Source of the DNA: Aplysia californica
Lineage: Eukaryota
NCBI RefSeq assembly: GCF_000002075.1
Contig: NW_004797578.1
Location: forward strand, 464,493-528,492
Direction of reading: 5' to 3'
DNA length: 64,000 nucleotides
This document shows, piece after piece, positions 10,601-42,468 of this stretch. The translations under genes and the position numbers were made by a program. The notes under the pieces were generated by a model. It had not been told where the DNA came from and made no database searches. It saw only the letters and a program-made list of their open reading frames with translations. Positions within the stretch are counted from its first letter, which is position 1; each line of letters starts with the position of its first letter.

Positions 10601-13600
10601 ATATTAGGTGTGTCCCGCGAGCTCATATGACCTTATGTAGTTGCGAGCGCCGTAAAACACTTTACAAAAACAAAAAACCTATACCAGTTGTTTTTTTCAG
10701 TTTTGTTCTCTATTTTGAGGCCCATCTATAAATTTTAATTTATTTCTTCAATGATTTTTTTCTTGCATGCTGTTTCGTATTGGTCAATACTGAAACCTAA
10801 AAATGTTTTTTGAAAGTTGATTTTCTAGCCTGTCCACAATCCCAAACCAGGATTGTTTTTCTCCCTTTTTCTTACATATATGGTAAGGGACAAATAGAAA
10901 TGAACATGTGCAAACTGTGAAATACCCCACATAAGGAACCTCCCAACCGAAAATGCCCCTTAGCAAGGATGTAGTTATATCACAGCGTCACTGACACAGT
11001 TTAGGTCTATGTATACCCACATATATATATTATAATCTGTCTAATGCTATACATGATATATAGGTCTATATAGAGAGCGAAATTATATAAGTATACACAC
11101 TTGCATTCAATAAAAATAATAATCATTTATATAAATGTGTTGGGGTGCTCTGTCACTGCTGGAAAATTAATGGCTACCTGTAGAAAATTTGAAGTTAACT
11201 TGGCAGTCACCCTGGCACTGATTTGTTGCTGATCCTGATTTTTTAATTTTTTATCACCCCTGAGATCCTGATTTTTAGGTTTCATAGAGTGGCAAATCTA
11301 CATATATGTACAAATATATATGTGTGTGTGTAAATGTTTATGCCTTTGTCGCTTTTTTTCATGGAATTAAATATATATGTATCTCCCTAATCTCTCCACT
11401 TTTTCTGGCTTCCAGGCTCTGCTCAAAACTGTCAGCTACCATGGTTCTATGATCCTGCAGCAGCTGTTGCAGTTTTCGAAACCAGTTACCGTGGTGATGA
11501 GTGTTCTAGAGCTGTCGGCTGCAGAGCTCCTGTTCTTGGCATGTAACCACAAGGGCAGTCACGTGGTGGATGTTTTCTTCCAGAGCCCCACCGTGAAGGA
11601 CAAACACAAGGACACTCTTGTGAAGAAACTTGTGGTAGGGGAAGTTTGTCTTTATTGCTTTTTAAAAAAAATTATTTTCTTGGAAAGTTATTCATGATCA
11701 AGGTTTAATGTCCTACTATACTTAATCAAGGTCACCGGAGTGGGTGGTTGGCGGATGCTCTGGTGTGGTTTGCTTCTTCTTTCCTATCAAACATCTATCG
11801 TCCTTATCTCCCCTTCTTTTTTTTATGTTTGTTACCCTCTTGTAACACCTCTGATCTTCTGGCGCTCATAGGACCTTATACAGTTGCGAGTGCCGGAAAA
11901 CCTCTACTAAAACAAAACAAAAGAAAAATTCTTTTCTGGGAAAGTTGTTCATGATGAAGGTTTAATGTCCTACTGTACTTAATCAAAGTCACCGGTGTCT
12001 GTGCTGTAATGGCTATGCTGTTCATCATTGCACACAGGTGTGAGATCGATTCCTTTGTGGAGGGGAAGTTATTTTATCAAGTGCCCTCCTCTGCCATGGC
12101 TCTCAATATTCCGCTATTTAGCGGATTTGCGCTACTATTTCCTCCGCTAAACCACCACTTTCTGTACATAATCAAAATTGCAAATACTATTTGGTAAGTG
12201 ACTGTTTTACTTGAAATTATTTTCCAAACCCTCAAATTAGTATAAAATAACATTGTTTTGATAAATTTATAGTTTTTATTTCAGCATTCTAGGATTAAAC
12301 GGTTTAATAATAATAATGGTTGTTTTTTAAAAAATGGTCTTCTGTCGCCATCACGCGGAAAGTTCCTCTTTTTAAAAATTCTGAGTTGAGACCCATGGTT
12401 GTAAGGTATCGTGGAAATTAGACTTGTAAATGTTATTCGTATCGCAGACACACACACCGCACGCACACACACACACACACACACATGTTCATCACTCCGA
12501 AGGTCCTATGGGTTTGTTTTTGCAGCATATTCCCCATTATTCCCCTATTTTCACAATGGTTTAGTTTCAGAGGGGGTCAAACTTTTGTTTTTCTTGTATT
12601 TCCAACTGATTTTATAAGTTTTGTGAACATTTAGATATGTGGAGATCTCACGCCGTCTTATGTACACTTGTTGATTTTTTTTTAAAATTTCTTTTAGCTT
12701 GTTATATCAGTTTTAGTTTTAGTAGAGGTTTTCCGGCGCTCGCTACTGCATAACGTCTTATGAGCGCCAGAAGATTAGAGGTGTTACAAGAGAGTAACAA
12801 ACATAAAAAGAAGAAGGGGAGATCAGGACGATAGATGTTTGATAGGAAAGGAGCAAATCACACCAGAGCACCCGTCAGCAACCCACACTTGTTATATTGG
12901 TTTCTGATTTTGTTATCAAATGAAGGCTGTGTCATGTACTTTTCAGTGTATTTTCATCTTTTGTTAACCTGCATGAAATCTACTCTTGTTTTGTTCTCAG
13001 GGTCTGTACATCAACATGGCCTGTAACAAAGTCGGATCTCGTTGTCTGGAAAACATCTGGAAGCTGGTCTCCATTCCGCTACGAGTCCTCATCGCTGAAG
13101 ATCTAAGCAAGGTTCTTTTCCTACATCCTTCGTATATTTTTGTATCTGTCTCTGTCTGTTTCGTTAATTCAATAAAATGGGAAAAACTGACAACGCTTAT
13201 CAATTACCCTCCTTCCTGCCCCTGACATATGAATTATTGCTTTGGTTTATCTTTGTGAAATTAAGATTTTATGCAGCTTGATTCTGATGTTGTGTATTGA
13301 TGTGAGGCGTTAAGACCAGAAATAGATGACATCTCTCATTTTTTAGCTGTGGGGTAAGGTTGTTGATACCTTTGTAGTTTGATTCATTTTTATGGGTTTT
13401 TTCCTTGACATTGAACTGGAATGTGGTGTATATGTTTCTTGTTGTACTTGGAAGACTCCAGTTTGTATATTCCCTGGGAAGGTATTTTAAAAAATGTATT
13501 ATCTCCATCTAAATAATGAAAGGCTGAACCTGGATTGGCCTTACAGGCAGTTTAGAAGCAGCCTGTCTCATAAATTGTGTGAATTTGATCACCTTCCTTG

Positions 13601-17315: not shown

Positions 17316-17899
17316 TAATAGTAGGGATAAGAACAAGGGGGGAAAACAAAGATGAAGAAGAGAATAAGGTAAGAGATGGGGAGATGTTGTTGCATTTAAC
17401 CCTTTCATTGCCAGGTTGTATGCGTTCCTGTCAGCACTGATTTTGAGCTGAGCTCGTTTCTCAGGACAGCAGCCTAATGTTTCAGTATTAGTGGACGCGC
17501 GGTCTAGATCTAGCGCTCTCATTACATATTTCAGACACTGGGTCTTTGATTGTCACTTTTCTTATCGGATCAGATTAACGAGTAAATGTCCTCTTTGGAA
17601 AGTGGTGGCACAGAGTCCCCCACATCGTATGGATGCGATAGTAAAACACAACGTACGGATAGGATTAAAAGAGCTGGAAGACCTTCAGCAGAGGCTGATG
17701 AAAAGTAACTTTTGAGGAATAAATTAGAGTATGTGGAATAGAGCCAGGAAAAAACAGGATGAGGTTGAGGTGGCTGTTGTAGAGAAAGACACTGCCTGCA
17801 GGTGGATAGGTGGGATATCGAGGGGAGTTCTGTGGACAGGTGGGATACTTACTTTACTTTCATGAGATATTGAGGAGAGTTCTGTGGACAGATGAGATA

Positions 17900-18348
17900 C
17901 AGTGGAACTCGGATTCAACGAGGTCGCCAGGCCCCACCTAAAATCTCGTTGAATCCGAGTGTTTGTTATAGCAAACATGAGGTTTTGTGTAGATAATTAC
18001 AGGCACTGAGCAAGTAATGTATAAAGGGAAGTCACAAATAGTGCCTGAAATGCCTGCATATTATGAGGTGTGTAAAAAAAAAAGACCGATTCGTTCGAAT
18101 GCACACACCTGTGTCATCTCGATTGTTTACCCCAAAGTTGTGTTGCTGTGAAGAGCCAAGCATACGGCAACTTTTGATTCCATAGACAAGCGCACAATTC
18201 ATTACGTAGATCTACGTCAAGAGTAGCTTATCATTGTAATAATGATCAGTTGCCGAGGGTTATTTTTATTGATTTTAAAGAAGAAGAAAAACGGGGATTC
18301 TATCTCATATCGTTGAATCCGAGTTCTTGTTGAATCCGAGTTCCACTG
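17900..18348. mobile_element. Tc1/mariner-pogo-type MITE in the putative NOP9 3' UTR
   Basis: TA|CAGTGGAACTCGGATTCAAC...GTTGAATCCGAGTTCCACTG|TA; interrupts a ~52-bp tandem repeat (17810-18410). Confidence 0.85.
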
Positions 18349-18548
18349 TACTTACTTTACTTTCATGGGATATTGAGGGGAGTTCTGCGGACAGGTGGGA
18401 TATTGTGAGGGGAATTCCGATAAATTTATTGGGCACGAGGAAATATTTCACTTTTTATAATAATGGTGAAGTTGGATTTCACAAGGTACAGCAGAAAAAT
18501 GTGGTTTCCAGATTTCCTTGTTGTTTTGTTATTATGCTAATTTCATGT

Positions 18549-18554
18549 AAATAA
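18549..18554 (+). terminator. Candidate polyadenylation signal of NOP9
   Basis: AATAAA followed by a T-rich downstream region; an earlier AATAAA occurs near 17718. Confidence 0.4.
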
Positions 18555-20188
18555 AAAAGTTCAAATTTATTTGCCTTTTGATTTTATTATTTTGTTTGTC
18601 CTCTTGTTGTAACCTTATGGTTCTAAACGTGTGTGACCCAAGTAGTCACTTTTCACATGATTTTGTGTCTTTTCGTTAACTCATCAGCCCTAGCAGTCTT
18701 CCCAGCTGGAGGTCAGCTAACACAGAGATGGGTTTGCATTTTTGCCAATATTTGAAACGATGTCATTTCCTGCTCCTTTCCTTTATTAACGCTGCTAACG
18801 CTAACCATTGAACATAATGGACTGAGAAGATCATTTTGAGATTCATCATTCTTTGAAGCATTCATTTTTGCACTTCTGTGTTTGCTGCATGAGTGAGGGA
18901 TGTGTTTGGATGTGGAAACAAAAGTCCGAACATTCATTGGTGACATCATCAGATTAGAGGCTGGTTGGCTGGTCACTGGTCATGCTTGTAACTGTTGATG
19001 GAGAGGGGGGGTAAATGTATGTAAGTCTATATATTGAAATTGATAAGATAAATCTTAACTGTCCTGATCCTGTCAAATTGGTTTGTTGTTTCTCCACATA
19101 CACTCATGCGCAAACTGACTCGCGTGTGCACACCCATCCACACACATTCTCTCACACCTCTTCTTCTCCATCCACATGTGTGCATATATAACTATACACG
19201 TGTGGTTGGCGGGTGCTCTGGTGTGGTTTGCTCCTTCTTTCCTATCAAACATCTATCGTCCTTATCTCACCTCCTTTTTTGTGTTTGCTACTCTCTTGTA
19301 ACACTTCTATTCTTTGGCATTGATATGACCTTATTGTGTTGCAAGTGCCGTAAAATTCTTTTTAAAAAAAGAAAAGAAAAAAAGCATGTAACTACAATAA
19401 TGCAATAGTATAGTATACTTAAGCATTGAAGAATATTGTAACAACAGGCAAGTTTGACGGAAAGAGAGGCAGAGGCAGACAGAGAGAAAAGATACTGGAC
19501 TAGTTGACAACATGGCTAGGAGTGGCAAGAACAACAGACACCATTGCTGCAACGCGGGGCAGAGTGAAATGGAGGTCCATGATCGCCCACGCCAGTCGGC
19601 AAGGCACCGGATGATAGTATGCTTGCACTGACGAACAGGCTCAGTCACATACATGTACATAATATAAATGAACAATAATAAATATTGTTACCATTAATAA
19701 ATAGCGTACACGCTAAATACTTTTTTCGTGTGTTTTTTTACGGCGCTCACAACTGCATAAGGTTATATGAGTGCGCGGGACCATTAAAATTAGACATTTT
19801 CAGTCGGTAGGAAATATTGAATTTTGCCAAGGTGGCGGCCGAAGCCTACTCTTTTCGATTTTAGACCACCAAGGGATCTTTAACGAGCGCAACTTGCACG
19901 CGGGACTCCGAAATTTTTTGCCCTTGTCCGTGAAGGTTAGGTGTAGATCTGTCCTACCTGAAGATAAGGAGTGTGGCTGAAAGACAGCAGTAAGAAGGAG
20001 CCAAGGAGTAACAGTAGAAAGAGTCAGGAGCCCAGAGGAGGGGGCGAAGGAGGTGAAGGGGTGGGGGCAGAAAGTGGAGACGAAAGCAGACAACAGAACA
20101 TTGCTAGAGAGCAGGAAAGTGGATATGAAAGGAGACAATTTTAAAGGACAAGTTTCAGTCCCTATCTGGATTCGAACCCAGGACCTTT

Positions 20189-20935
20189 CTGTCCCCGTAA
20201 AATTATGCTAATTTAGATGGCCAAATTATTCCCCAAAAATGCCAAATTATGCAAAAATTATGCAAGTTATCGTAACACCATTCGCGACATGTTTTGCACT
20301 TTTTCAACACGAATTTTCATGATTTTCATGTTTTATGTACAGAAAAATTTAAAACAGAACATATCAGTATCACTAATTTGTTGTGTATTTGGAAAGAAAA
20401 CAATACACATCAGTAAGAAAAAAACAACCAAAAAATATAATCTCTAACTTTCAGCTGTAGATCTAGATCTAGTTCTAATCTAGATCTATAGAGGAAAGAA
20501 AAATGTTTAAAAAAAAAAAAAGGAAATCTGGACCTCTGATGCTGGCACATTACTAAAACCAAGGACACCTGTCAAACATGAAACATCAGCATACATGAGA
20601 ACAACAACTTTTGATGGATTGTAAAATTGAACTTGCTCAAGGAACAAAATCACAACTCAAAGGCCCTAACCAAGATCTTCTAACAAGGGAAATAACCAAC
20701 TTTTTACTTACATGAGACTTATTACCAGAGACACTAAAATATAGAGACAGGTTCCTGTCTCTATATTTTAGTGTCTCTGTTATTACGGTAATTATTTCCC
20801 TTTAGTCACATGGCGAGGCGTTAATTGTTTTGTGAAAAAAAAGGGTAAAAAAAGCGAGGAATCCAAAATTATGCAAATGTTGCAGAATTACGCGAAAAAA
20901 CGGGGCCGCACTATCGCATAATCCTACAGGGACAG
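20189..20935. mobile_element. CTGTCC...GGACAG MITE with 6-bp TSD (long form)
   Basis: TIR ctgtccccgtaaaattatgc / gcataatcctacagggacag; TSD accttt. Confidence 0.85.
20726..20779. mobile_element. 54-bp perfect hairpin mini-MITE (P-like)
   Basis: 26-bp perfect arms cagagacactaaaatatagagacagg, 2-nt loop, 7-bp TSD ttattac. Confidence 0.8.
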
Positions 20936-21116
20936 ACCTTTGAATGAGAGGCGAGCACCTTAACCTCTAGGCCACGAGAGCCCCCGTGGCGTCATTGCAG
21001 ATTGCTCTTCTAGTCTTCTCCCTACCTGCAGTGTCCTGCAGTACATTATGTAGCCTACCTATCCATGAATGCTAAAGCACAACTGTTCATTACAGATGCA
21101 TGATTTCTTTCTCTGC

Positions 21117-22049
21117 NNNNNNNNNNNNNNNNNNNNNNNNNNNNNNNNNNNNNNNNNNNNNNNNNNNNNNNNNNNNNNNNNNNNNNNNNNNNNNNNNNNN
21201 NNNNNNNNNNNNNNNNNNNNNNNNNNNNNNNNNNNNNNNNNNNNNNNNNNNNNNNNNNNNNNNNNNNNNNNNNNNNNNNNNNNNNNNNNNNNNNNNNNNN
21301 NNNNNNNNNNNNNNNNNNNNNNNNNNNNNNNNNNNNNNNNNNNNNNNNNNNNNNNNNNNNNNNNNNNNNNNNNNNNNNNNNNNNNNNNNNNNNNNNNNNN
21401 NNNNNNNNNNNNNNNNNNNNNNNNNNNNNNNNNNNNNNNNNNNNNNNNNNNNNNNNNNNNNNNNNNNNNNNNNNNNNNNNNNNNNNNNNNNNNNNNNNNN
21501 NNNNNNNNNNNNNNNNNNNNNNNNNNNNNNNNNNNNNNNNNNNNNNNNNNNNNNNNNNNNNNNNNNNNNNNNNNNNNNNNNNNNNNNNNNNNNNNNNNNN
21601 NNNNNNNNNNNNNNNNNNNNNNNNNNNNNNNNNNNNNNNNNNNNNNNNNNNNNNNNNNNNNNNNNNNNNNNNNNNNNNNNNNNNNNNNNNNNNNNNNNNN
21701 NNNNNNNNNNNNNNNNNNNNNNNNNNNNNNNNNNNNNNNNNNNNNNNNNNNNNNNNNNNNNNNNNNNNNNNNNNNNNNNNNNNNNNNNNNNNNNNNNNNN
21801 NNNNNNNNNNNNNNNNNNNNNNNNNNNNNNNNNNNNNNNNNNNNNNNNNNNNNNNNNNNNNNNNNNNNNNNNNNNNNNNNNNNNNNNNNNNNNNNNNNNN
21901 NNNNNNNNNNNNNNNNNNNNNNNNNNNNNNNNNNNNNNNNNNNNNNNNNNNNNNNNNNNNNNNNNNNNNNNNNNNNNNNNNNNNNNNNNNNNNNNNNNNN
22001 NNNNNNNNNNNNNNNNNNNNNNNNNNNNNNNNNNNNNNNNNNNNNNNNN
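21117..22049. other. Assembly gap between NOP9 and METTL17
   Basis: Run of N flanked by (CT)n. Confidence 0.99.
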
Positions 22050-22096
<47 letters not shown>

Positions 22097-22286
22097 AATC
22101 TCGAACTGGCTCGAACATTGATTTCGATGTGCAACATTGATTTTCATGTGCGTCGTTCATTGAAGAGAGAGAGACTGTTTCTTTGGACAGTACATGCAAT
22201 TAATTTTTGTAGTCAGAAAAATCACGAATACCAAAGAAAACGACGGTGTAAGCCAGAGGGGAAAGGTCATAGGTCACTATCAGAAA

Positions 22287-22430
22287 ATGGCTGCCTCCAT
22301 GAACAAGGTTGGAGTCTTGTCAAAGCCTTCTATTTTCCTGCGAATTCTTGGTCAGTCTGGCGCTTCACTTGTTACAATACGAGGACCTTTGTCTTATTGT
22401 CAGGGTGTTTTCATTTGTAGAAGTATTTCG
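22287..22430 (+). CDS. METTL17: METTL17 exon 1 (mitochondrial presequence-like)
   Basis: aaaATGgct MAASMNKVGVLSKPSIFLRILG...CRSIS |gtgagt; basic, no acidic residues. Confidence 0.8.
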
Positions 22431-25400: not shown

Positions 25401-28400
25401 CTAGAAAAAGGTAAATGCAAAGATAGCCTTGGAGGCAAGCTAGTTTAGAGGTTAAGTGTATGATTCTCCATTATAAGGTTGGGGGTTAACACTTTCCACC
25501 CATGCATTGCACAGAGCACACAACGCTTGCCTTCACGGTCCAGGGTGCAGATGCGGTACATCAGTATGTGGTTAGTTGGTTTATTTCAGGAAAAGTGATC
25601 GAGTACCTATTTCACATTCAAGAAAAGAACAAGGGCAGGCCGAGGCGTGAGCCACAGACTGTGGAAGACCTCGTGAGTCGTGAGTGGCAGTCGGGGGGCA
25701 AGAGCATTGTCACTCGTCAGTGCAAGTTGGTCAGCGTATGGTGCTAGATAGGGACTGTAGAGTAGGCGGTCGCGTGAAATGTGAATTTGTGACTTCTTGA
25801 TGGACATCCTGCAGTTGTTGATTGCTACAAGAAGTGGGTGTTTATATTTAGACTACACAGTACTACACCTGTATCTCGGCAAAAATACCCCAACTAATAT
25901 CAAACTTTCTGTATACTGAGAAATTATTTAATGATGATCACATGTTCACCAAGAGAGGAATTAGAATCTGAACTGAAAACATTAGATCTAGCTCATTTTT
26001 CACCCGCATTCTCATCAAAGTGTAAGGGTAAAGCAGCATTGGTCTTCTACATTTTTCAAAAAAATTTTATTCCAGTTGTTGCATACATACTGATTTCAAC
26101 CTCAAAGGCCACACAAACCATTGAGAAAGGAAATTTAATTTTAACAAGTGCGCATGTCAAAAACGAGATCATTGCTACTACATTTTTTTTGCTATATCAC
26201 ACTGTCGCTCATCAGCGTCCCGTGGGGATAAGGGACGGCTTGTTACCGTCACCTATCGGCGTCCCGTGGGGCAAAGGGACGACTTCTTACTGTCGCCGAT
26301 CGATGTCCCATGGGGGCAAAGGGATGGCTTCTTACCGTCACCGATCGACGTCCCATGGGGGCAAAGGGACGACTTCTTACTGTCACTGATCGACGTCCCA
26401 TGGGGCCAAAGGGACAGCTTCTTTCCCTCATTGATCGGCGTCTTGTGGGAAAAAGGGATGGCTTCTTTCCGTCATTGATTGGCGTCTTGTGGTGAAAAGG
26501 GACGGCTTCCTACCGCTGCCGATCGGCGTCTTGTGGGGGCTAAGTGTTAAACTGTCAGTGCCAGCTGGTGGTTGTTAGTGTTCTTTTTGTCATTCCGACA
26601 ACCTGTTGACCCTTGTCATTGAAGTTTGGAAGTTGGTGGTTGGCGGATGCTCTGTTGTGGTTTGCTCCTTCTTTCCTATCAAACATCTATCATTTTTATC
26701 TACCCTCCTTCTTTTTTGTGTTTGTTACTCCCTTGTAACACCTCTAATCTTCGGCACTTATATGACCTAATTGTGTTGCAAGTGCTGTAAAACTCTTACA
26801 AAAAAAGAAGAAAGAAGTTTGGAGAAATTCTTCAAATTTAGTATGTTTGGAGTTCTTCATCTATATGAAACGTAAACAAAAGAAGATAATTCGTACATTT
26901 TTCCTTTACACAAATTTCAATTAAATATTTTGTATGTGTCTTTTGCAGATCCAAACAAGTTTGAAAATTTGAGTGGAGCTGACCTAGAGGATGCAATAGA
27001 TCAACACAGAAAAGCTGTTTTGTCAAGGCTACGAAAGACTATCTATAACTGGAAACCAATGAAGTATGTTTCATGAATATTCTTTTTTTTTCTTTTATCC
27101 GCCGCTTATACCCTTTTGGGTGTCGCGGGAAGAAAGAGACGTCTCTCTGTCGCCAGCTGGAGAGCTTGGGTCGGGGGATGCCGTGGGTGGTTAATGTTTC
27201 CCTGACTCCATCTATCCAGGTCTTTCTCAGTCGTCGTCTAGCCTTGTTGCCATCAAATTTTTTTATGTAGGCACGTTGTGCTGGATGGTGTGTTGTTAAT
27301 CGGTTTCGTGAAAATAAATGCCAAATTGTCTCCTTGTCTTCAAATTTAAAGTGTTTTGTAAAATTGTGTGTCCATGTTTGTGTGAATCAGTCCTCAACTT
27401 AGAACATATTTTTTGACAGGTCTACAGAAGACTCTCAAGATCTGGAAACCAGCAAAATACATTTCATGAATACTCTGATTCTGATTCATGCAATTCAAAG
27501 TGTGACTTGACTCTTATTGCATTACAAGCTACTGTTCAAATCACATTCAACCAATTAATGGGGCATTCTTGAACTTGGCCATGGCTTTTCAAAGATGGAT
27601 GTTCAATTTATAAGTTTTGCTCCTTAACTAGCCTTAAAGTATTGAAAGTGACATTAAACCTGCACATTTAAGAATTACTGGGATGTTGACTTGAGGTTGT
27701 ATCATGTGTAAAGAACTTGTTCTTGGCTGCATTTTATCTGACTGCAACCTTATGAAGCATGTCACTTGTCAAGAGACACAAAATGAAATGGTGGGTGGTT
27801 GGCGTGTGCTCTGGTGTGGTTTGCTTCTTCTTTCCTATCAAACATCTATCGTCCTTATCTCCCCTCCTTCTTTTTTGTGTTTGTTACTCTCTTGTAACAT
27901 CTCTGATCTTCGGCACTTATATGATCTTATTGTGTTGCAGTGCCATAAAACTCTTACTAAGACTAAATGAAATGAAAGTTAAAAAAGACATACAACAATT
28001 TTGATTGCCCCTCTTCACCAGATAGCCTACACATTGTAGTTATCCAACTTGTTGCAGCTTCAATAGTTTATCTAGTCAGGTTTCGTTTTCTGTAATGTTT
28101 TTGTTTGACAAGCTTCTTATTTTTTATACTTTGCTTCTGTTTCAGCTTTGATGCTTTCACCTCTTACACCTACATGGTTGGAAGGACGTCTTTTGACTTC
28201 TCTGTCATTATGCAGTGTTTTACAGAGGTATGTTCCTTGTACTTTTCAGTTGCTTTATCTTGCCAAGCTCAGTGTCATTTATGAGGAAAAAACAAAGGGA
28301 AATATGGCATAATCTATCTGAATGGATTAGACATCTTTATACTTATCATGCACAAGGCAGGAGTAGGCCACAGGAAACATGGAGGAGATGCGTGGAAAGG

Positions 28401-31400
28401 GATATGAGAAAGATGAAGCTCACTTGGAACGAGCTTGGAAGGATGGCCCAGGACAGAGATAAATGGAAGGAGCTTGTATGTGGCCTATACCCTGCCAGGG
28501 GTGAAAGGCATTGATGAGAAGATACTTATCGTTGTTCTTATCATTGCCCTCAGATATCAAAACGAGATCTGGACTTCCAGCCGTCCACTGTGTATCACTA
28601 TGGGTCAAAGGTCGGGGCCTGTGTCTGGTAAGTCAAAACTTTGCTCTCAATTGGTCGCTTTTAAGGACAAGTGGGCTATCCCGAAAAATGCTGTTTTGAG
28701 AAAATCGAAGGTAAAGTTTGTGCCCCTTGTTCGGTTTCGTTAAAAAACATGGAGACTTTTCTCGATAACCAAACAAATATATTCATCAATGAAACCAAAC
28801 TTTTCCTATAGGTAGGGCAATGCCCACTTTTGGTGCAGGTCAAGTTTTCTGGAACCCCCCCGGAATCTGGGTTAGCCCGCTTGTCCTTAAAAGCGACCAA
28901 TATTCTTTGTGACTTTCACTGTGTATAAAAAGCAGCTGGCAATATTAGTGCAATGTTTTAAATGCCTTGTCAACACACAGAAGTTGAGAATCTTTGTCTT
29001 TTGTGGGGTAGGAATTTTTCTCATCCTTCCTGGAAGTTCAAGTGTGGACACTGTATCTTTGTCAAGCTTTAGGCTATGGGTCTTGGAAAAGAGAACCGTC
29101 CATTCAGAATCATCTGACTATTCTTCAGTCAGACTCGACATATGAATGATGAGACTTATCAAACTCTCAGTGTGAAACATTGATGGGAAAGTCTGTGGGT
29201 GGAAACAGAGGAGATGTTTTTGTCATTTCTGTTTTTAACTGGTCAGAAAGTGGTCTTAATGAGATGCAAACACCGGTCACAATGGATTTAATTTAGACTG
29301 ATGCATGCCATTATCAGAACAAGTTCTTGGGAAGTACAAAGTTTTGACCATAGTTTGCCGACTGGACAGGCCACCCTTGATCCCACTTTGTACTTCTGGC
29401 CCTCTTGACCCCTCCCCGAAATTAGCTATTCATTGCCAAAAATGTCAAAGACAGAATTTTTCTTTGGCTCCCTCTTGGGCAGGTTCGACTGTAGTTTGCA
29501 AACAGAAATGTTCAAGTTAATATTGTGTTCAGTATCTTTTGTGTCAAATGCCTCATCACTACATGTTTCTTTGGGTTTGTAGGTATGCCCAACTTTTTTG
29601 TCTGTTGAGGTTAAGTATGGATAGGGATTTTCTTATGAAAATATTATATATGTGAGTTTAATTAATTAACAGAACTGTCTATCCATTTGCTTACTTCCTG
29701 ATATAAAGTTCTCTGTTGATGAAAAATCAAAATGAGCACATGTAGAAACTTATTCAATGCACCTAGTGGCTTATGTTGTTGAAAGTTTAACCTTTCTGTT
29801 TATATGTAAAAAAAGATATGAGTTTGATTTCCTACTGGGAAAAGTCTTTTGTACCTAGTACCTCCGTTATTCTGCCTGAATGATGTGTCTCCTCGCTAAC
29901 AAACATGACTGTACCCCCCGGGGTGGTGCTACTAACTGAAGTGTCTTTAGGCCATTCCCAAAGGGGGGACATTCTCATCTCGAGTTCTTATGCACAGTAG
30001 AATTGTAAATGGCCTGATTCATCAATTTCATGCTCGTAACTGCCTGAACTGCAACAGGGAACTGCTGCTTTTTTTTTTTTCCTAATCCTTACTATCGTCA
30101 TTTTCCTCTACTTCTTTTGTATGTTTGTCACACTCCTATGACCCGCTATTTCCGAGGTGCCTTGATAGTTGAAGCAGACTTTGTGCTGTTGAAGCTAGAG
30201 AGGTGACCAGAGTAAGTCTGATTCCCTGTTAGGACTTCTCTGTTGACACCCACCCCTTGGCGCTCATATGACCTAATGCAGTTGCGAGTACCGTAAAACC
30301 TTTTCTAAAACTAAAAACATGGCTGAAGCAACTCACCTAAATGATTTAAATTGTGTTGATGAGGGCAGAAAACATCTATCTATCACTTTCAATCATCACG
30401 CCTTTTGTCCTGCCTTCATTTTCAATCATCCCGCCTTTTGTCCTGCCTTCATTTTCAATCATTACGCCTTTTGTCATGCCTTCATTTTCAATCATTATGC
30501 CTTTTGCAATGCCTTCACTTTCAATCATTACGCCTTTTGTCATGCCTTCACTTTCAATCATTACGCCTTTTGTCGTGCAGGGCGGCTGACAAAACATGGC
30601 GGAGCATTGGAGAGCACTACTGTGTGGATAGTTCGTCCCACATGAGCACCATAGCAAGGCTGTTGCTGCAAGGTGAGCCATCTGTCCTTCCACTCGTCCT
30701 TGATCTTGATTGTCTTGAACAAACCCTTTTTGTGGGTGGTTGGCAGGTGCTCTGGTGTGGTTTGCTTCTTCTTTCCTATCAAACATCTATCGTCCTTATC
30801 TCTCCTCCTTCTTTTTTTATGTTTGTTACTCACTTGTAACATCTCTAATCTTCAGCACTTATATATGACCTTCTTGTGTTGCAAGTGCCGTAAAAGACAT
30901 ACTAAAAAAACCCAACCTCTTTTACCTGATGCTTTTATAAAAATGATCACAGCTGGATTTGTTGCCGCATTGTTCATTAAAAGAACCAGTTTTTCCAGAT
31001 GTCTGTGATAATAATAATAAATAAAAAGCATTTGTATAGCGCATATCCCCGCTCAACAGCAGGCTCTATGCGCTTTACACCATATTATTACCCCAGCAGA
31101 CCATAGGACACTCCGAAACATTCTCAGCTTCCCGGGAAACATACAGCGCAAGCAGCTGATTAGCACTCAAACACTAACAAACTGACAAGATCTTTCGCTG
31201 TCTATAGCCGGGTACCCATTCCCACCTGGGTGAAGTGAGGAAAATTCATGTAAAGTGCCTTTCCCAAGGACACAACGTCGGGCCCCTGACGGGATTCGAA
31301 CCCACGACCTTACGGTTGCGAGTCCGAGAGCCTAACCACTTCACAATTGCATGCAAAAAACTTTAGTTCAAATCACTTTGGGGAGTACTTTTTAGAGTCT

Positions 31401-31503
31401 TTCTGCTGGGATGTTGTATATATTTGAAAGGTTTTGAAAATGGGAATTCCAATGTAAAGCGCATTGAGCTACTTTTTTTGGAAATGCGCTGTATGAATTG
31501 TTA

Positions 31504-31549
<46 letters not shown>

Positions 31550-34500
31550 CCCCCCACTTGAGGTCAGTGCTGACAGTCAAGATCAAAGCAGCCTGTTTTC
31601 TAAACAACCTAAAATGTGTCAATGGGAGGGGGGGGGGGGGGGTATATATTCACAATCATTTTCTGTTTCCCTTGTCAGCCATGTCAGTCACAGACTTTCT
31701 TTTGTTTTGTTTCTCTGACACATTACATTATTACATAGCTGGATGCTTTCAGTCAATTTTCAAAAACTACGTTTTGATTACTTTAGTGTTGGCAAGTACT
31801 ATCAAAGTAGATATATCTTCAAACAAAATTATATCTGGGAATGTATCTTTTGAAGAAACCTTTTCACTTCATCAATGGCTTTTTTTCTGTTTCAGATGGT
31901 AACGAGCAGGAGACAGTGATGTCTATAAAGGGTGTCCACTTCAGACAGTTTGAGCCTAGCCCAAAAGAGGTAATTTTTTGTTTTGAAAAAAATATGTTTT
32001 ATTTACTGTGAGTGAAACTAATGATTGACTGTTGACTCTGTTACAAACACATTGTTTTTCGCGAGCATATTTTTCAGGAACTCGTGGAAAGCGGAATTTC
32101 TATCAATATGTGGCTAATAAAAGTTGTATTTCAACATGCGATACTGAAATAGTGTAGTTGTACATCGTTACATGTTAGCATTAGAGAAGGAAATTCTGGT
32201 GTGGTTTGCTCCTTCTTTCCTATCAAACATCTACCGTCCTTATCTCCCCTTCTTCTTTTTTATATTTGTTACTCTCTTGTAACACCTCAAATCTTCTGGC
32301 GCTCATATGACCTTATGCCTTATGCAGTTGCGAGTGCCGTAAAACCTCTACTAAAACAAACAAGTAGTATAAACTTTTCTAATGCTGCCAGTGTATTATT
32401 ACTTACTTGCTTTACATTTTCATCCTCTGTTGCCGTTAAGCGTCGAGGGGAGATGCAGTTTTCTATGGTAGGCCAGCTCTGCAGCTCTTTCAGTTGTGAT
32501 GTTATGTTTTCTTAGGGTTTCCTTGACACCCTCGATCAACCTTTTGCGTGGCCTTCCTCTTCCTTTATAGCCTGAGTGCTTGGTGTGGTAAGTTCTCGAG
32601 GCTGGCTGGTCAGGTGACATGCGTAACAGGTGACCAAACCATTTTATCCTCTGTCTTTCTATGTAAAGCAGGCAGGACTCAGTGCCGATAGCTGCTCTTA
32701 CTTCTTCATTTCTCTGCCTGTCTATTATTAAGTTTTATTACAAAACAAAATGATGATTCTTTCTTTGTCCAGAACAAGTTTTCCCTGGTGGTCAGCCCGT
32801 TCATGTTGATAGAACAACCCTCGGCCGAGGAGAGGATGAACCTGGTCCTCAGCTTGTGGGAAATGACCGAATCCTACCTGGTGAGAAAGATTTTTTTTTT
32901 TGTAGAGGTCGGCGCTCGCAACTGCATAAGGTCATATAAGTGCCGAAGATTAGAGGTGTTACAAGAGAGTAACAAACACAAAAAAGAAGGAGGGGAGATA
33001 AGGACGATAGATGTTTGATAGGAAAGAAGAAGCAAACCACACCAGAGCACCCGCCAACCACCCACTGAGAAAGTTTGGCTGTCAATAATTCTATGGCCCT
33101 GTGCTGTAAAACTCTTACCAAACTAAACTACTTTATTACTGTGAGTGATTGCTCAAGAGTCATTTGTTTAATTGTTAGTTATAGTGTGTTAGTAAGTTCT
33201 GATTTTTTAATATACTTATATACATTTTTTGTGGGTGGTTGGCGGGTGCTCTAGTGTGGTTTGCTCCTCCTTTCCTATCAAACATCTATCGTCCTGATCT
33301 CCCCTTCATCTTTTTCATGTTTGTTACTCTCTTGTAACAGCTCTAATCTTCTGGCGCTCATATGACCTTATGCAGTTGCGAGCGCCGTAAAACCCCTACT
33401 AAAACTAAAACTTATATAAATTTGTTATTTATTTATTTTTTTTACTGTCCTTTTATGTATAGTTAATGTATGGTTGTGAAAGCTCTTCTTTATGTGGTTG
33501 AGCTGGTTTTTCTGTGATACGTTTTTTCTTGTGTGAATGATTATGTGATTGGTGTAAAGCGTTCAGAGCCTATACTTGTATGGGATAGAGCGCTATATAA
33601 ATGCAATCTATTATTATTATTATTATTATTATTATTGAGTACTGTAAAACTAAAATAATCTGCTGCCACTGAAATTTGGCTGTTATCATCACGCTGACTT
33701 CCTGGAAACTTCCATTCAGCAACATAGACAAAGCAACAAAGATTTGCAAGTGCCGTAAAAAAGCAAATATGACCTTATGAGGTTGCAAGCACTGTAAAAA
33801 CTTTTACCAAACTCATACTCAAACTGGAATGACTCACAATGATATCTTTTTTTTTTACATCTTCAGGTACTGATTGAAAATGGGACAACAGCAGGATTTA
33901 ATTTGATAAATGAAGCGAAGGAATTTCTTTTGAATGTAAGTAGCCTTCTAAATTAACTCCTTTTCTCCAGCTAGCCGCTCCCAGTGGCTCGCGGTGGGAA
34001 CAGCTGTGCCGATGAGTCGCTGGCAGCTACTTTGGCATATTTCTTTACAACAACTTTGATGTCAAATTACTTTTTGGCAATTGCCGAAAACGGATTTTGT
34101 ACAGGGAGTTAATTCATAAGATAAAGAACTCTCAAAATAAGTTCATTTTAAAAAATTTAATGACCAATTTAGTGACGTATACGTCAATTATAGATTTCAT
34201 GTCAAAAGAAGGCCCCGACATAGTGGGTTTACCCCCCTTGGAGATGAAAAGATAAGCAGAAACTTTTATGATGAATGGGCCCCAATGACTATGTTCATGT
34301 TTTTGTTGTTATCGATCCAGCAACATCTGGGCTCTTGCCCTTCTGTCCAATGCCATGTAGACTATGTTCATAAACCGACACATGCTTGACATTTTTGTGA
34401 ATCTGACTTAGCTAACTACTTGGCCACTGTTTTTGACATGAAGCTAAAGGTTTGATGTCTGTGATGAGTGGGGTTTCAGTACAATATGATAGTTTTCTTC

Positions 34501-37500
34501 TACTTCATTCTATTTTTTTTTCTCTCTTGTAATACCTCTGATCTTCTGGCGCTCATATTACCTTATGCAGTTGCAAGCGCCGTCTCTGCTAAAACAAAAA
34601 ACATTTCCGTGAAAAATAACCCAAAACGAGTTCGTACAGCTTTAAAGTGACCCTCTACTGAATTTTCCAGGTTTCTCAGGTGGATGGCACAAGCCGGTTC
34701 CAAGGTCACGTGTTTGCACCAGTAAGACCCAAGCTTTTTTCTTATTTTTTAAAGAACTGATTCGGTTTATGTTTGACTGTGATTGTTTTTTTCTCAATTT
34801 AGTGGCGGGTGGTTGACGGGTGCTCTGGTGTGGTTTGCTCCTTCTTTCCTATCGAACATCTATCGTCCTGATCTCTCCTCCTTCTTTTTTATGTTTGTTA
34901 CTCTCTTGTAACACCTCTAATCTCCGGCATTTATATGACCTTATTATGTTGCAAGTGCCATAATACTCTTACTTAAACTAAACTAAACAATTTAGAGCCA
35001 CCTTTCTGCTTCGGATGCAGCATTACCTCCGTAGTTGACTCATGATGGCAAACGATTAATTCTTAAGATGTGATGTCTTTTTTTCGATGTAATGCGCATT
35101 GAGCATTTTTTTAGATAATGGAAATATGCTGTATAAATGCTATTTATTATTATTATTATTGTTGTTTCATTGCTGAAACATAATGCATGATGTTTTATTT
35201 TTTATTTTGACGTATCATAGTGCCCGCATGACAAGCCATGTCCCAAGCTGAGGGAACAGAAGATGCCTTGTCTCACAGAGTGTGTCCACAAGGAAGTCGA
35301 TATCAAGTCCAGTAAATTAGTAAGTCAATCTACCCAGTCAAGTAAATTAGTGAGTCAATGTACCCAGTCAAGTAAATTAGTGAGTCAATCTACCCAGTCA
35401 AGTAAATTAGTGAGTGAGTCAATCTACCCAGTCAAGTAAATTAGTAAGTCAATCTACCCAGTCAAGTAAATTAGTAAGTCAATCTACCCAGTCAAGTAAA
35501 TTAGTGAGTCAATGTACCCAGTCAAGTAAATTAGTGAGTCAATGTACCCAGTCAAGTAAATTAGTGAGTCAATCTACCCAGTCAAGTAAATTAGTGAGTC
35601 AATCTACCCAGTCAAGTAAATTAGTGAGTCAATCGACCCAGTCAAGTAAATTAGTAAGTCAATCGACCCAGTCAAGTAAATTAGTAAGTCAATCTACCCA
35701 GTCAGGTAAATTAGTGAGTCAGTCTACCCAGTCAAGTAAATTAGTGAGTCAATCTACCCAGTCAAGTAAATTAGTGAGTCAGTCTACCCAGTCAAGTAAA
35801 TTAGTGAGTCAATCTATCCCTAGAAATCCTGTCTCCTCACATTTTTATGTATACCTTCCTGAGATGACGTCATGAATATTTGCGCCAGTTGCAATTCAGA
35901 TCTTGTTGCTCTACCAGGCGTAATAAATACTTATGGCTCGGCACTTATTTGATCTTATTGTATTGTTGCAACTGCTGTAAAACTCTTACTAAGACAACCC
36001 CCCCCCCACCACCACCATCATAAAAAAAACACCAAAAACCAAAAAACTAAAGGCTTGGATAGGCAGAAGAGGAAAGGAAAGGTGTTGAAGAAAAATCACA
36101 AAGGTACTGACTGATCAATATATAGGAAGGTGAATCTGAAAATTGCATTTGCAACTGACTGTAGAGCACACTTTACTCAGTCATGTGTAACTCAAGATCA
36201 CGGGACCCAAGAACATGATTTAACAAAATTATTTACAGCATAACTTTCTTGATTACCTTTAAAGGCTGTTATTTCCGATAAAATTAAACATTGATCGCTT
36301 TTTTTTTTTTTCAGAGTGAAAAGCCCAAGAAAAATGCAAGATATTCATATGTTATTCTGAAAAAAGGAGTAAGAGAAGAAGAGGGTGAGTTTGTGTGGTG
36401 GTGAACAAAATCTATGAAACTTGGTGAAATGTCCTGTCTTTGCCTCGGTTCTTTCGCAATGTCTGTCTTACTTTTTACTAGCACTCTGTTGAGATTATTG
36501 TATCTTTGTTCTTCTTTTTATTGAAACAAATGAGGCAAAAAAAGGAAACAAAAGGTTTAAATGAAAAGTATAAGTTTGTAGTCTTGTGTGGTATCTTGCT
36601 TGTCAGGTTTGCCCTTTGTTGAGAGAGAGAAGTAGTGATTTGGGGTAGTGGTTGGGGGGGGGGGGGGGGGGGAGCATTTAAAAAGTTGCAACGGGTCCCA
36701 AATCATTATTTTCTGTATAGTTTTGCTATTTAAGATGTACCTTCAATAAAACATCCTCTGTGTACGGCTTGATAATTATTTCTTTATACAAATGACCTTT
36801 CACTTCATATAGTTAGCAATGTTGACGTTTGATATATCTGTAAATTAGAATTAAAAACTGTTCATTGCATAAGTTTACCTTTTGTGTCAGCTGATTGAAA
36901 CTATGCACCACCCACATTCCTAATGGCATACCCCCCCCCCCTTCACTTTTTGTTCAAGTCCTTGATCTGACACAGACATCAACAATTATGGTCTGCAACT
37001 CATTTCTTCCCTCAGGGGCTCTGAAAAAGAATTATTATATTATCCTGTTTTTTTCCTGTCATCTGTTTGTTCAGGTTCTCTAAGTGATTCATTCTTGGGG
37101 GTCTACCTCTGCCTCTTTTGCCTTCTCATTTCAATCTGCTAGTGTGGTTTTCTAGTTGTCTCATTTGACCTTGTCCTTGACCTTTCTGTGAACAGAGTTT
37201 GGCTGGCCGCGGGTTCTACGTCAGATCAAGGCCAAGCGCCACACCCACTGCCATCTGTGCCTGCCCTGTGGTCAGCTGCAGCATGTGGTCATCACTAAGG
37301 GCAAGTTTGACAAGTAAGTTCTATCCTAGTCACAGCTTGGCTTATTTGTGAGGCAAGCTGTTCAAATGTTTTAAGCCCAGAAAGTGCAGTTTTCCAGGAG
37401 AGAAAAAACTTTCATTTTTTAAACTATTGCACCTACGTTATGCATCTTTTCTGTGGGTGGTTGGTGGGTGCTCTGGTGTGGTTTGCTCCTTCTTTCCTAT

Positions 37501-40429: not shown

Positions 40430-42468
40430 GAGGGAGAGAGACAGAGAGAGAGAGAAAGAGGAGGATGAAAGGAGGAGGAAACTCACTTTTTAATTTCTCA
40501 TTTTGTCTGTTTGTAATATGGTAATGCATCTGCAACACTGCACAAATGTTAATTTCTTGCCAACCAAGGTTCTTTCCCTGAAAAAAAACGTGTTGTACTC
40601 TAAAGCCTGAGTGGGTTGTTGATGGGTGCTCTGGTGTGGTTTTCTCTCTCTATTCTATCAAACATCTATCATCCTTATCTCTCCTCCTTTTTTGTGTTTG
40701 TTACTCACTTGTAACACCTCAAATCTTCAGTTATTTCATAACCTAATTGTGTTATAAGTGCCATAAAACTCTTCCTTGAAACATAAAATATGAACGGCTG
40801 GTGTCACATGCCGATTTCATTTGAATAGAATTTGAAATCACTTGAAGTAGCTCATCTTCGTCCCGTCTACCTCAATTTGTACTTTCAATGTTGTGATGAG
40901 TCTAGAAGTTGCTCAATGTGACCACAAGGCCTTCGTTTTAATCATTCTCCGTGGATGGTTGGCGGGTGCTCTGGTATGGTTTGCTTCTTCTTTCCTATCA
41001 AACGTTTACCGTCTCTATCTCCCCTTCTTCTTTTTTATGTTTGTTACTCTCTTGTAAAACATCTAATCTTTGGCACTTGTATGACCTTTTTGTGTTGCAA
41101 GTGCACTAAAACTAAAAACAGCAGACTTTGTGCTGTTGAAGCTATAGAGGTAAACAGAGTTAGTCTAATTCCCTGTAAGGACTTCTCTGTTGACATCCAC
41201 CCCATGGCGCTCATTATATGACCTTATGCAGTTGAGAGTGCCGTAAAACCTCTGCTAAAACTTTTTTTTTAAAGACCATTCTCCTCTGTGTGTCATACCT
41301 CGTGGGTGTCTGCACTTTTCTTTTTGTTATTCAAGAGCTCTTCCCTCCTTCAGGGAACTGACCTCTGTGGTCCAATAGTTAGACGTTGGGCTTTTTGCTG
41401 TTCTACGTAAAAGAGGTGTATTCGTGGGTGGCTGGTGGGTGCTCTGGTGTGGTTTGTTTCTTCTTTCCTATCAAACATCTATCGTCTTTATCTCCCCTCC
41501 TTCCATTTTATGTTTTATGTTACTCTCTTGTAACACCTCTTATCTTCAGCACTTATGATCTTATTGTGTTGCAAGTGCCGTAAAACTCTTACTAAAACGT
41601 TAAAGGGATCTGACTTCTGTAGTCCAATAATTAGACCTTAGGCTTTTTGCTGTTCCACGTAGAAGAGATGTATTCTGTTATTTTATCGTGTTATTGTAAC
41701 TCCGTCTGTCTAACACGATGCTGTACGGTTGGTTGGCCCTGATATATGTGCAAGGTGTAAGCAAGTCTCTTAAATGATCTATGGAATGTAAAACTTTTAC
41801 AGTCAGATTCATTCATCACTTCTTCAGGGAACCCACACATTTTTGACTTTCTTTTTGCCATGCTGTGTTAATATCATGTAAATGTTGATTTAGATGTTAA
41901 TGAGTATGCGTAATAAAAATTGTTTACTACTACCTTTACTTGAAGGTTCTACCGAATTTTTTTTTCATTTGTTGATATATGTTCTCTGGTGTAAATCTGG
42001 AATCGGAACATGAAGTATGAAGTGTCGATGAGCTAAGTGGGTGGTTGGCGGGTGCTCTGGTGTGGTTTGCTTCTTCTTTCCTATCAAACATCTGTCGTCC
42101 TTATCTCCCCTCCTTCTTTTTTGTGTTTGTTACCCTCTTGTAACACCTCTAGTCGTCGGCACTTATATGACCTTATTGTGTTTCAAGTGCTGTAAAACAC
42201 TTACTAAAACCCCCCCAAAAAAGTCAGTGAACTAATAGAGAAGACATTGGATGAGTCAGTCTCCTTTACAGTTAAATAATAATTGAGAATTACTTGAAAA
42301 TGAATTCTTATTAACAAAAGATTTGACTGCTGCTAGCTACAATGGATCATTGTATGGCAGACTTGGAGAAACAAAGTCGTATAGAATAGTTTGTAGAAAT
42401 ATATACAGTGATGTATGTGTAACAACAACTCCTTTGGGAAGCAGGCCTTAGCTGCTGTGAGTGTTAGG

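What the first reader, a model, noticed from the sequence alone, without database searches (positions are those of the whole stretch)
11667..41675. Family A retroposon has two TSD classes: 8-15 bp and ~72-80 bp
Seen: three copies are flanked exactly by long direct repeats of unique sequence: 11667-11738/11924-11995 (72 bp, ~6 mismatches), 41352-41423/41604-41675 (72 bp) and 37372-37452/37632-37723 (~80 bp with indels). Other copies have short TSDs (gaagtttgga at 26621/26814, atttaatttg around 7779, aaatgaaatg around 27791). I saw no intermediate lengths. Established: target-primed reverse transcription normally gives ~5-20 bp TSDs; long ones are known mainly from some RTE and R9 elements. Inference: a discrete long class suggests a second geometry of second-strand cleavage. 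About 75-80 bp is one nucleosomal gyre, so the second nick may fall on the neighbouring DNA gyre.
Basis: partly seen in the sequence, partly recalled or inferred. Interest (0 to 1): 0.8.

Follow-up and report, generated by a model that had tools for sequence, protein, structure and literature searches.

The report
Long target duplications around sea-hare SINEs
Three copies of a very common 180-base jumping element in this mollusc genome really are flanked by 71-92-base duplications of the insertion site. A wider sample gives long duplications of many lengths (about 36 to 127 bases), in three element families, so this is a broad tail of a known process and not a special 75-base, nucleosome-sized class.

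Summary
The family A copies at 11740, 37453 and 41424 are full length. Each is flanked, to the base, by direct repeats of 75, 81/92 and 71 bp. Two repeat pairs occur nowhere else in the genome. The third lies in an old dispersed repeat whose other copies carry that segment once, so the duplication arose with the insertion.

The interpretation does not hold. I could fetch only 357 kb: the window, 200 kb of another scaffold, and 29 loci. That gave 98 usable family A copies. About 46 have 7-21 bp TSDs (median 10). Six have long ones: 39, 58, 71, 75, 81 and 127 bp. None of the three found outside the window falls in 70-82 bp.

Two other SINE families with the same 3' tail also have long TSDs: 43 and 36-47 bp in one, 58 bp in the other. 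The 71-81 bp cluster is not significant (P 0.25-0.8).

Best reading: ordinary target-primed reverse transcription in which roughly 6% of events use a second-strand break 36-130 bp away. This appears to be a property of the shared, still unidentified, LINE machinery. Large TSDs of this kind are already known for L1 in cultured cells and for RTE and R9. Whether an empty zone at 22-35 bp is real remains open.

The assembly gap at 21117-22049 touches none of these features.

The parts
11664..11738 (+). Left copy of the 75-bp target-site duplication of the family A copy at 11740
   Evidence: 68/75 identical to 11921-11995; only these two places in the 927-Mb genome match.
11740..11920 (+). Full-length family A element, subfamily A2 (3' variant GCAGTTGCGAG), 4.5% from its subfamily consensus
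   Evidence: nhmmer model positions 2-182; divergence.
11921..11995 (+). Right copy of the 75-bp TSD, starting directly after the A-rich tail
37352..37452 (+). 5' part of an older dispersed repeat 'R'. Its last 81 bp (37372-37452) are the left TSD copy of the family A element at 37453.
   Evidence: paralogues match window 37352-37452; arm alignment.
37453..37631 (+). Full-length family A element, subfamily A1, 9.8% from consensus, inserted into repeat R
37632..37794 (+). Right TSD copy (37632-37723, 92 bp with indels) followed by the rest of repeat R (to about 37794)
   Evidence: paralogues match window 37632-37794. Single paralogues (C341:541477-541640, C3:3981480-3981640, C301:98538-98712, C147:401-569, C119:1207935-1208106) hold the arm segment once.
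41353..41423 (+). Left copy of the 71-bp TSD of the family A copy at 41424
   Evidence: 62/71 identical; unique in the genome apart from the right copy.
41424..41604 (+). Full-length family A element, subfamily A1, 8.0% from consensus
41605..41675 (+). Right copy of the 71-bp TSD
   Evidence: A contig from another sample bridges 41572-41900 with 1 difference (record 32).
7780..7965 (+). Family A copy with an ordinary 10-bp TSD (ATTTAATTTG)
26632..26812 (+). Family A copy with an ordinary 10-bp TSD (GAAGTTTGGA)
40063..40239 (+). Family A copy with an ordinary 12-bp TSD (ACAAACATTTTT)
10157..10677 (+). Copy of family C, a SINE of about 524 bp that shares family A's 3' tail module. A family C copy elsewhere (C14 sample 2659-3182) has a 58-bp TSD.
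29913..30301 (+). Copy of family B, a SINE of about 385 bp that shares the same 3' tail module. Family B copies elsewhere have 43-bp and 36-47-bp TSDs.
21117..22049 (.). Assembly gap inside the finding's range; not involved in any feature
   Evidence: One search lists the N runs. The nearest family A copies are at 19198-19375 and 26632-26812.

Best explanation
Family A is a very abundant SINE-like retroposon of about 180 bp. It has a fixed 5' end (GTGGGTGGTTGG...) and a 3' end of ...CTTACTAAAACTAAA. It inserts by target-primed reverse transcription.

In most events the two strands of the target are broken about 10 bp apart, giving 7-21 bp TSDs. In roughly 6% of events the second (top-strand) break lies much further away, anywhere from about 36 to about 130 bp. 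Fill-in then duplicates that whole stretch, so a complete element ends up exactly between two long copies of its target.

The three window copies are such events. The long lengths are broadly spread, not fixed. The same thing happens in two other SINE families that carry the same 3' tail, so it is a property of the shared LINE-encoded machinery or of how the host completes its insertions, not of family A or of nucleosome geometry.

Shown: the anatomy, the uniqueness of the arms, the single-copy state in paralogous empty sites, the spread of lengths, and the occurrence in three families.

Inferred: that the distal break is a stochastic one, either a loosely placed endonuclease cut or a pre-existing nick such as a repair or lagging-strand discontinuity. 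This is the model proposed for large L1 TSDs.
For: Anatomy:
- All six long-TSD family A copies are full length and start at model position 2.
- The left arm ends 0-2 bp before the element and the right arm starts 0-2 bp after the tail. No short TSD lies inside.

Arms unique in the genome:
- The 11740 copy, the 41424 copy and L047 (127 bp, 87% identical).

Paralogous empty sites:
- The arm of the 37453 copy lies in repeat R. At least five paralogues carry upstream flank, arm and downstream flank with the arm present once.

Age:
- Arm-to-arm divergence is about 6-15%. Element-to-consensus divergence is 4.5-9.8%. The ratio is about 1.5, where up to 2 is expected if the duplication dates from the insertion.

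Distribution in the sample:
- 98 usable copies in 357 kb. 46 have TSDs of 7-21 bp (median 10). Six have long ones: 39, 58, 71, 75, 81 and 127 bp. No alignment score falls between 14.5 and 23. Mismatched-flank controls reach a score of 6.5 or more only three times in 97.
- Both subfamilies, A1 and A2, are involved.

Sister families with the same tail:
- Family B has 43-bp and 36-47-bp TSDs. Family C has a 58-bp TSD with unique arms that abut a full-length 524-bp copy.

Independent contigs:
- Contigs from another sample bridge 37200-37476 and 41572-41900 with 0-1 differences.

Precedent:
- In HeLa, up to 10% of de novo L1 inserts have TSDs over 100 bp. In NER-deficient cells the figure is 57-91%, explained by use of a distal unrelated nick (PMC5223499).
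Against: - The sample is small.
- With only nine long TSDs a modest preferred length cannot be excluded.
- Nothing was seen at 22-35 bp (P 0.05-0.13 under a log-uniform tail). This may mean a truly separate second mode rather than one heavy tail.
- Three long-TSD copies lie within 30 kb of one gene. That is 3 of 24 in the window against 3 of 74 elsewhere (Fisher P = 0.16), which could hint at a local effect.
- No orthologous empty allele was found. The laid contigs were swamped by repeat copies.
- The partner LINE was not identified. There was no RT ORF in the sample.
- The 39-bp case lies in another dispersed repeat, and its arms are no more alike than paralogues of that repeat are. It is only probable.
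Confidence: 0.75

Rival explanations
1. There is a discrete second TSD class of about 72-80 bp because the second nick falls on the neighbouring gyre of nucleosomal DNA.
For: The three window copies give 71, 75 and 81 (92) bp. Nothing was seen between 22 and 35 bp.
Against: Out-of-window family A long TSDs are 39, 58 and 127 bp. Sister families give 36-47, 43 and 58 bp. The 10-bp cluster is not significant: P 0.25-0.37 for family A alone, 0.65-0.79 pooled. The clustered values are the ones that generated the hypothesis.
Confidence: 0.06
2. The long repeats are later local tandem duplications (replication slippage or unequal exchange) that happen to enclose a SINE. They were not made by the insertion.
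For: This genome has many local 'A-B-A' duplications with a unique middle part, about 15 in 357 kb. Two of them enclose a family A copy without abutting it: L026 455-872 and the C14 sample 22565-23089.
Against: In six family A cases and three cases in families B and C, both inner edges of the repeat coincide with the element's ends. They match to within 2 bp in every case except one family B copy (C14 sample about 122373-122773), whose 36-bp left arm ends about 11 bp before the element, or abuts it if the arm is read as 47 bp. Random duplications would almost never do this. Arm divergence fits the age of the elements.
Confidence: 0.08
3. The SINE inserted with a normal short TSD exactly at the junction of a pre-existing two-copy tandem repeat.
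For: One case does look like this. The copy at C14 sample 78529-78349 has an 11-bp TSD (CTGTTTAGTAA) inside an older tandem repeat of about 140-149 bp, 2.2 units long. I therefore did not count it as a long TSD.
Against: The counted cases show no inner short TSD. Paralogues of repeat R carry the arm once. Hitting a junction to the base six to nine times is very unlikely.
Confidence: 0.04
4. Assembly artefact: mis-joined or duplicated reads around a repeat.
For: The assembly is a gapped draft. One case (L047) sits on a 1,057-bp contig.
Against: The arms differ by 8-15%, including indels, so they are not duplicated reads. Contigs from another sample reproduce two of the junctions.
Confidence: 0.01

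Closest known systems
Large target-site duplications of human LINE-1 insertions in cultured cells (Gilbert 2002/2005 and Symer 2002, as summarised in Servant et al. 2017, PMC5223499)
   Same: A minority of otherwise normal TPRT events (up to 10% in HeLa) carry TSDs far longer than the 5-30 bp norm. The lengths are variable and are explained by use of a distal second-strand nick.
   Different: Here the events are old insertions of SINEs, seen in the reference assembly of an invertebrate. The short mode is about 10 bp, not about 15 bp. The long ones seen are 36-127 bp, not over 100 bp to kilobases. All are full length, whereas the extreme L1 alterations were linked to 5'-truncated inserts (PMC2912911).
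RTE-1 of Caenorhabditis elegans (TSDs up to about 200 bp) and R9 of bdelloid rotifers (126-bp TSD)
   Same: Non-LTR elements whose insertions duplicate tens to hundreds of bases of target. I found no paper for either in the held library.
   Different: R9 has a fixed length at a fixed rDNA site. Here the lengths vary and the sites are dispersed. Whether the partner LINE is of the RTE clade could not be tested.
Mollusc SINEs with shared LINE-derived tails, including 'LP-SINEs' that have a LINE-derived instead of a tRNA-derived head (Matetovici et al. 2016, PMC4758252)
   Same: Short retroposons in gastropods and bivalves in which several families share one 3' tail, which implies one partner LINE. 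Some lack a Pol III-type head. Families A, B and C here share a tail module of about 60 bp.
   Different: I could not align family A to the published consensus sequences because figures are not held, so identity with a named family is untested. That paper reports no long TSD class in the passages I read.

Membership tests
Non-LTR retroposon (SINE) inserted by target-primed reverse transcription | Dispersed copies flanked by target-site duplications that differ from copy to copy | tested here: met
   58 of 97 copies have a flank match above the mismatched-flank control, each with its own sequence.
Non-LTR retroposon (SINE) inserted by target-primed reverse transcription | Defined 3' end with a simple-repeat or A-rich tail, shared with a partner LINE | tested here: inconclusive
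   The 3' end ...CTTACTAAAACTAAA with short variable tails is constant, and the tail module is shared by families A, B and C. No LINE with this tail was found in the 357-kb sample.
Non-LTR retroposon (SINE) inserted by target-primed reverse transcription | Empty sites contain the TSD sequence once | tested here: met
   Met for the 37453 copy through paralogues of repeat R. Not testable for the unique arms, since no orthologous empty allele was seen.
Canonical SINE (Pol III-transcribed; tRNA, 5S or 7SL head) | Small-RNA-derived head with an internal promoter | tested here: inconclusive
   No Rfam family reaches threshold anywhere in the window. I did not run a tRNA or promoter-box scan on the consensus. 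Scan note s1-727268 says there are no Pol III boxes.
Discrete long-TSD systems (R9-like, fixed stagger) | One fixed long TSD length | tested here: not met
   Lengths are 36-47, 39, 43, 58, 58, 71, 75, 81-92 and 127 bp. The cluster test is not significant.
RTE-clade-mobilised SINE | 3' tail homologous to an RTE LINE of the same genome | not testable with these tools

The most novel reading that the evidence does not exclude
The machinery that moves families A, B and C has two truly separate ways of making the second-strand break. One is a tight stagger of about 10 bp. The other starts only beyond about 35 bp, for example outside the DNA covered by the insertion complex, or at the next lagging-strand or repair discontinuity. 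In that case about 6% of all its insertions in this genome would duplicate 36-130 bp of host DNA. With tens of thousands of copies or more, that would make it a steady source of duplicated splice sites and small regulatory pieces.
Probability: 0.3. Interest if true: 0.55.

Novelty: new member of a known kind. Interest (0 to 1): 0.3.

Why it matters
How the second DNA strand is broken and joined is the least understood step of LINE and SINE insertion. This is a natural system with very many old insertions, in which about one event in sixteen has a long, variable TSD. It gives a large sample for asking where the second break falls relative to sequence, transcription, replication and chromatin. 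The genome-wide histogram is a simple computation. The long TSDs also duplicate host sequence next to exons. However, the specific and more exciting claim, a discrete class of about 75 bp set by the nucleosome, is not borne out, and long TSDs as such are already known.

Tried and rejected
**Sampling**
- I tried to fetch about 1 Mb of the genome for a proper histogram.

**Candidates I dropped as TSD look-alikes**
- C14 sample 7410: the 84-bp 'TSD' is a GA microsatellite.
- C14 sample 108402 and 108618, and L037 1425: the flanks are partial family A copies, from nested or tandem elements.
- C14 sample 78529: 137-149 bp repeats, re-read as an 11-bp TSD inside an older tandem repeat.
- C14 sample 57903, 64715 and 129260, L026 (two cases) and L029: the repeats are minisatellite or low-complexity sequence.

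**Nick-site logos**
- For 46 short-TSD copies there is no clear motif at either break, apart from A at the first TSD base. That A is confounded with the tail.

**Reads**
- Contigs of four runs laid on 37200-41900 were swamped by repeat copies. No empty or recombined allele could be read. This is uninformative, not negative.

**Partner LINE**
- There are 50 open reading frames of 180 aa or more in the sample. I scanned six of them, four of which were the longest, and found host-type domains (GPCR, fibrinogen) or nothing, with no RT or endonuclease.

**RNA families**
- Rfam gave no match in the window, so there is no hammerhead or other ribozyme that would point to a Penelope-type or retrozyme origin.

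**Literature**
- Searches for RTE and R9 long TSDs found no usable paper.
Full report
**What the window is.** The window is C308:464493-528492 of a 927,310,431-bp assembly in 4,332 contigs. Those figures match my memory of the Aplysia californica draft genome, and earlier notes of this scan call it the sea hare. I did not verify the name. GC content is about 39%.

**The assembly gap.** The N run at 21117-22049 lies 1.7 kb from the nearest family A copy (19198-19375) and 4.6 kb from the next (26632-26812). No element or flanking repeat touches it, so continuity across it has no bearing on the finding. I did not try to fill it.

**The element.** Family A is about 180 bp long.
- Its 5' end is sharp (GTGGGTGGTTGGCGGGTGCTCTGG...). 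Its 3' end is ...GTGCCGTAAAACTCTTACTAAAACTAAA, followed by a short variable tail.
- It is extremely common. Whole-genome searches gave 3,000-5,000 first-look candidates, with only the best 40 scored.
- A profile built from window copies found 106 full-length copies in the 357 kb I could read.
- Two subfamilies differ in the 3' third.
- Its last 60 bp or so are shared with at least two longer SINE families. I call them B (about 385 bp) and C (about 524 bp). A shared tail implies a shared partner LINE, as described for mollusc SINEs in PMC4758252.

**The observation.** All three long flanking repeats are real and sit exactly as described.
- Copy 11740-11920: arms 11664-11738 and 11921-11995, 68/75 identical.
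- Copy 41424-41604: arms 41353-41423 and 41605-41675, 62/71 identical.
- Copy 37453-37631: arms 37372-37452 and 37632-37723, 75 of 92 columns, with indels.

In each case the left arm stops at the base before the element's first G. The right arm starts 0-2 bp after the tail. There is no additional short TSD inside.

**Are they target-site duplications?** Four lines of evidence say yes.
1. The arms of the 11740 and 41424 copies match nothing else in the genome. They are therefore not ends of a larger repeat.
2. The arm of the 37453 copy is not unique. It belongs to an old dispersed repeat, R. This turned into the best test available. Searching with left flank plus arm, and with arm plus right flank, showed that R runs from window 37352 through the arm to about 37794. 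Individual paralogues carry the arm segment once: C341:541477-541640, C3:3981480-3981640, C301:98538-98712, C147:401-569 and C119:1207935-1208106. These paralogous 'empty sites' show that the 81-92 bp were duplicated when family A landed in R.
3. Arm-to-arm divergence is about 6-15%. It is about 1.5 times the divergence of the enclosed elements from their subfamily consensus (4.5-9.8%). That is as expected if the arms began diverging at insertion.
4. Contigs from a different sample reproduce the junctions 37200-37476 and 41572-41900 with 0-1 differences. Together with the 8-15% arm divergence, this excludes an assembly artefact.

- I took 97 full-length copies with clean flanks, plus one on a short contig. 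For each I aligned the 250 bp upstream, anchored at the element's first base, to the 250 bp downstream, which had to start within 45 bp of the model end. Mismatched flank pairs served as the control.
- 58 copies scored above the control level.
- 46 have TSDs of 7-21 bp, with median 10 and mode 10.
- After removing look-alikes (a GA microsatellite, nested or tandem partial elements, and one copy that has an 11-bp TSD inside an older tandem repeat), six family A copies have long TSDs:
  - 39 bp: C14 sample 79843-79665, minus strand.
  - 58 bp: C14 sample 38333-38511.
  - 71, 75 and 81-92 bp: the window copies.
  - 127 bp: L047 664-854. Its arms are 87% identical and unique in the genome.
- None of the three found outside the window lies in 70-82 bp.
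- Three values within 10 bp among six are expected by chance with P = 0.25 (uniform) to 0.37 (log-uniform).
- The 39-bp case is only probable, because its arm lies at the end of another dispersed repeat.

**Not specific to family A.** I scanned the 50 tail-only matches, which belong to other families carrying the same 3' module. I also ran an unbiased scan for local direct repeats. Together they found three more cases.
- Family B, C14 sample 19181-19554 (minus strand): 43-bp arms.
- Family B, about 122373-122773: arms of 36 bp, or up to 47 bp.
- Family C, full-length copy at 2659-3182: 58-bp arms that occur nowhere else in the sampled DNA and abut it exactly.

Pooled, the long TSDs are 36-47, 39, 43, 58, 58, 71, 75, 81-92 and 127 bp. 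This is a broad spread with no significant cluster (P = 0.65-0.79). The long TSDs therefore belong to the shared insertion machinery, not to family A.

**What remains open.** No TSD of 22-35 bp was seen, although such lengths would be detected easily. No alignment score fell between 14.5 and 23. Under a log-uniform tail from 22 to 150 bp this has P = 0.13 for six cases and 0.05 for nine. That is suggestive of two regimes rather than one heavy tail, but it is not established. The window holds 3 long TSDs among 24 usable copies, against 3 among 74 elsewhere (Fisher P = 0.16).

**Rival explanations.**
- Later tandem duplication. The genome does contain many small 'A-B-A' local duplications with a unique middle. 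Two of them enclose a family A copy without abutting it. Such events cannot explain nine cases whose inner edges coincide with element ends. The match is within 2 bp in eight of the nine. The exception is the family B copy at about 122373, where the fit depends on reading the left arm as 47 bp instead of 36 bp.
- Insertion at the junction of an older tandem repeat. This does seem to have happened once. It leaves a short inner TSD, which the other cases lack, and it is contradicted by the R paralogues.

**Mechanism.** The first nick and cDNA synthesis look ordinary: the elements are full length, with normal tails and exact 5' ends. What varies is the position of the top-strand break that primes second-strand synthesis.
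- It is usually about 10 bp downstream and sometimes 36-130 bp downstream.
- I found no sequence motif at either break.
- The broad spread fits a loosely positioned or host-derived distal nick. This is the explanation given for the large TSDs of up to 10% of de novo L1 inserts in HeLa, and of most inserts in NER-deficient cells (PMC5223499; see also PMC2912911).
- Which source of nick is used here is inference only.

**Comparison with known systems and verdict.** Long TSDs are known for L1 in culture. From my own knowledge, not checked in a paper here, they are also known for RTE-1 of C. elegans and R9 of rotifers. The present case is a further example, seen in old insertions of three mollusc SINE families at about 6% frequency. 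The partner LINE is unidentified: there was no RT ORF in the sample, and no further DNA could be fetched. The nucleosome-gyre interpretation rests on three values from one window and does not survive a wider sample.

Noticed in passing
L005:3603-3958 (C14 sample 43603-43958); L006:7442-7845; L027:623-1197; L037:1499-1754; also coordinates (e.g. C497:118055-118356, C324:58942-59167): Family A often carries extra copies of its own 5' part directly upstream of a full copy, always starting at the element's first base. Examples: 3 x positions 2-61 then a full copy; 3 x 2-79 then a full copy; about 4.7 x 2-123; and single 5' pieces (about 12-80) next to roughly 1-3 of every 40 best genome hits. This fits reverse transcriptase jumping back onto a template after reaching the RNA's 5' end, or later tandem amplification. 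I did not resolve which.
   Followed up: partly
window 1-64000: Strong strand bias of family A in the window. The 22 copies listed by the repeat finder are all on the + strand. nhmmer adds six copies or fragments on the - strand, at 12711-12886, 32891-33065 and four at 54708-56792. Earlier scan notes say the family nearly always lies in the sense orientation of its host gene.
   Followed up: no
L008:8166-8766 (C14 sample 78166-78766, minus strand): A tandem repeat of about 140-149 bp, 2.2 units long. Its unit is the 3' 80 bp of a family A copy plus a 60-bp spacer, with junctions at a GTAA microhomology. A younger family A copy with an 11-bp TSD is inserted at the end of the first unit. It mimics a 137-149-bp TSD.
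   Followed up: yes
L004:8112-8556 (C14 sample 38112-38556); L037:1149-1754; L011:8323-9013: New family A copies often land in or right next to older family A copies. In one case the 58-bp TSD starts inside the tail of the upstream copy. Another locus shows nested copies with an 8-bp TSD inside an older copy. Possibly the RNA tail pairs with existing tails at the nick.
   Followed up: partly
window 17811-18402; L028:2027-2464; L003:1935-2209; L006:8787-9101 and others: There are many small local duplications of the form arm / unique middle / arm, with arms of 30-280 bp and spacing of 60-520 bp, and no mobile element between the arms. I counted about 15 in 357 kb. They form a background that any TSD survey in this genome must control for.
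   Followed up: partly
window 37352-37452 + 37632-37794: An old dispersed repeat 'R' of about 165-185 bp, with over 1,000 first-look candidates and copies 74-86% alike. It is split here by the family A insertion. Its class is unknown.
   Followed up: partly
window 37200-41900: Contigs of runs labelled as two other organisms (coded B and C) pile up on the family A parts of the stretch about as heavily as those of the window's own species. The family is therefore abundant in related species too.
   Followed up: no
L047:843-854: The family A copy with the 127-bp TSD ends in a run of 13 G after ...CTAAAACTT, in place of the usual A-rich tail.
   Followed up: no
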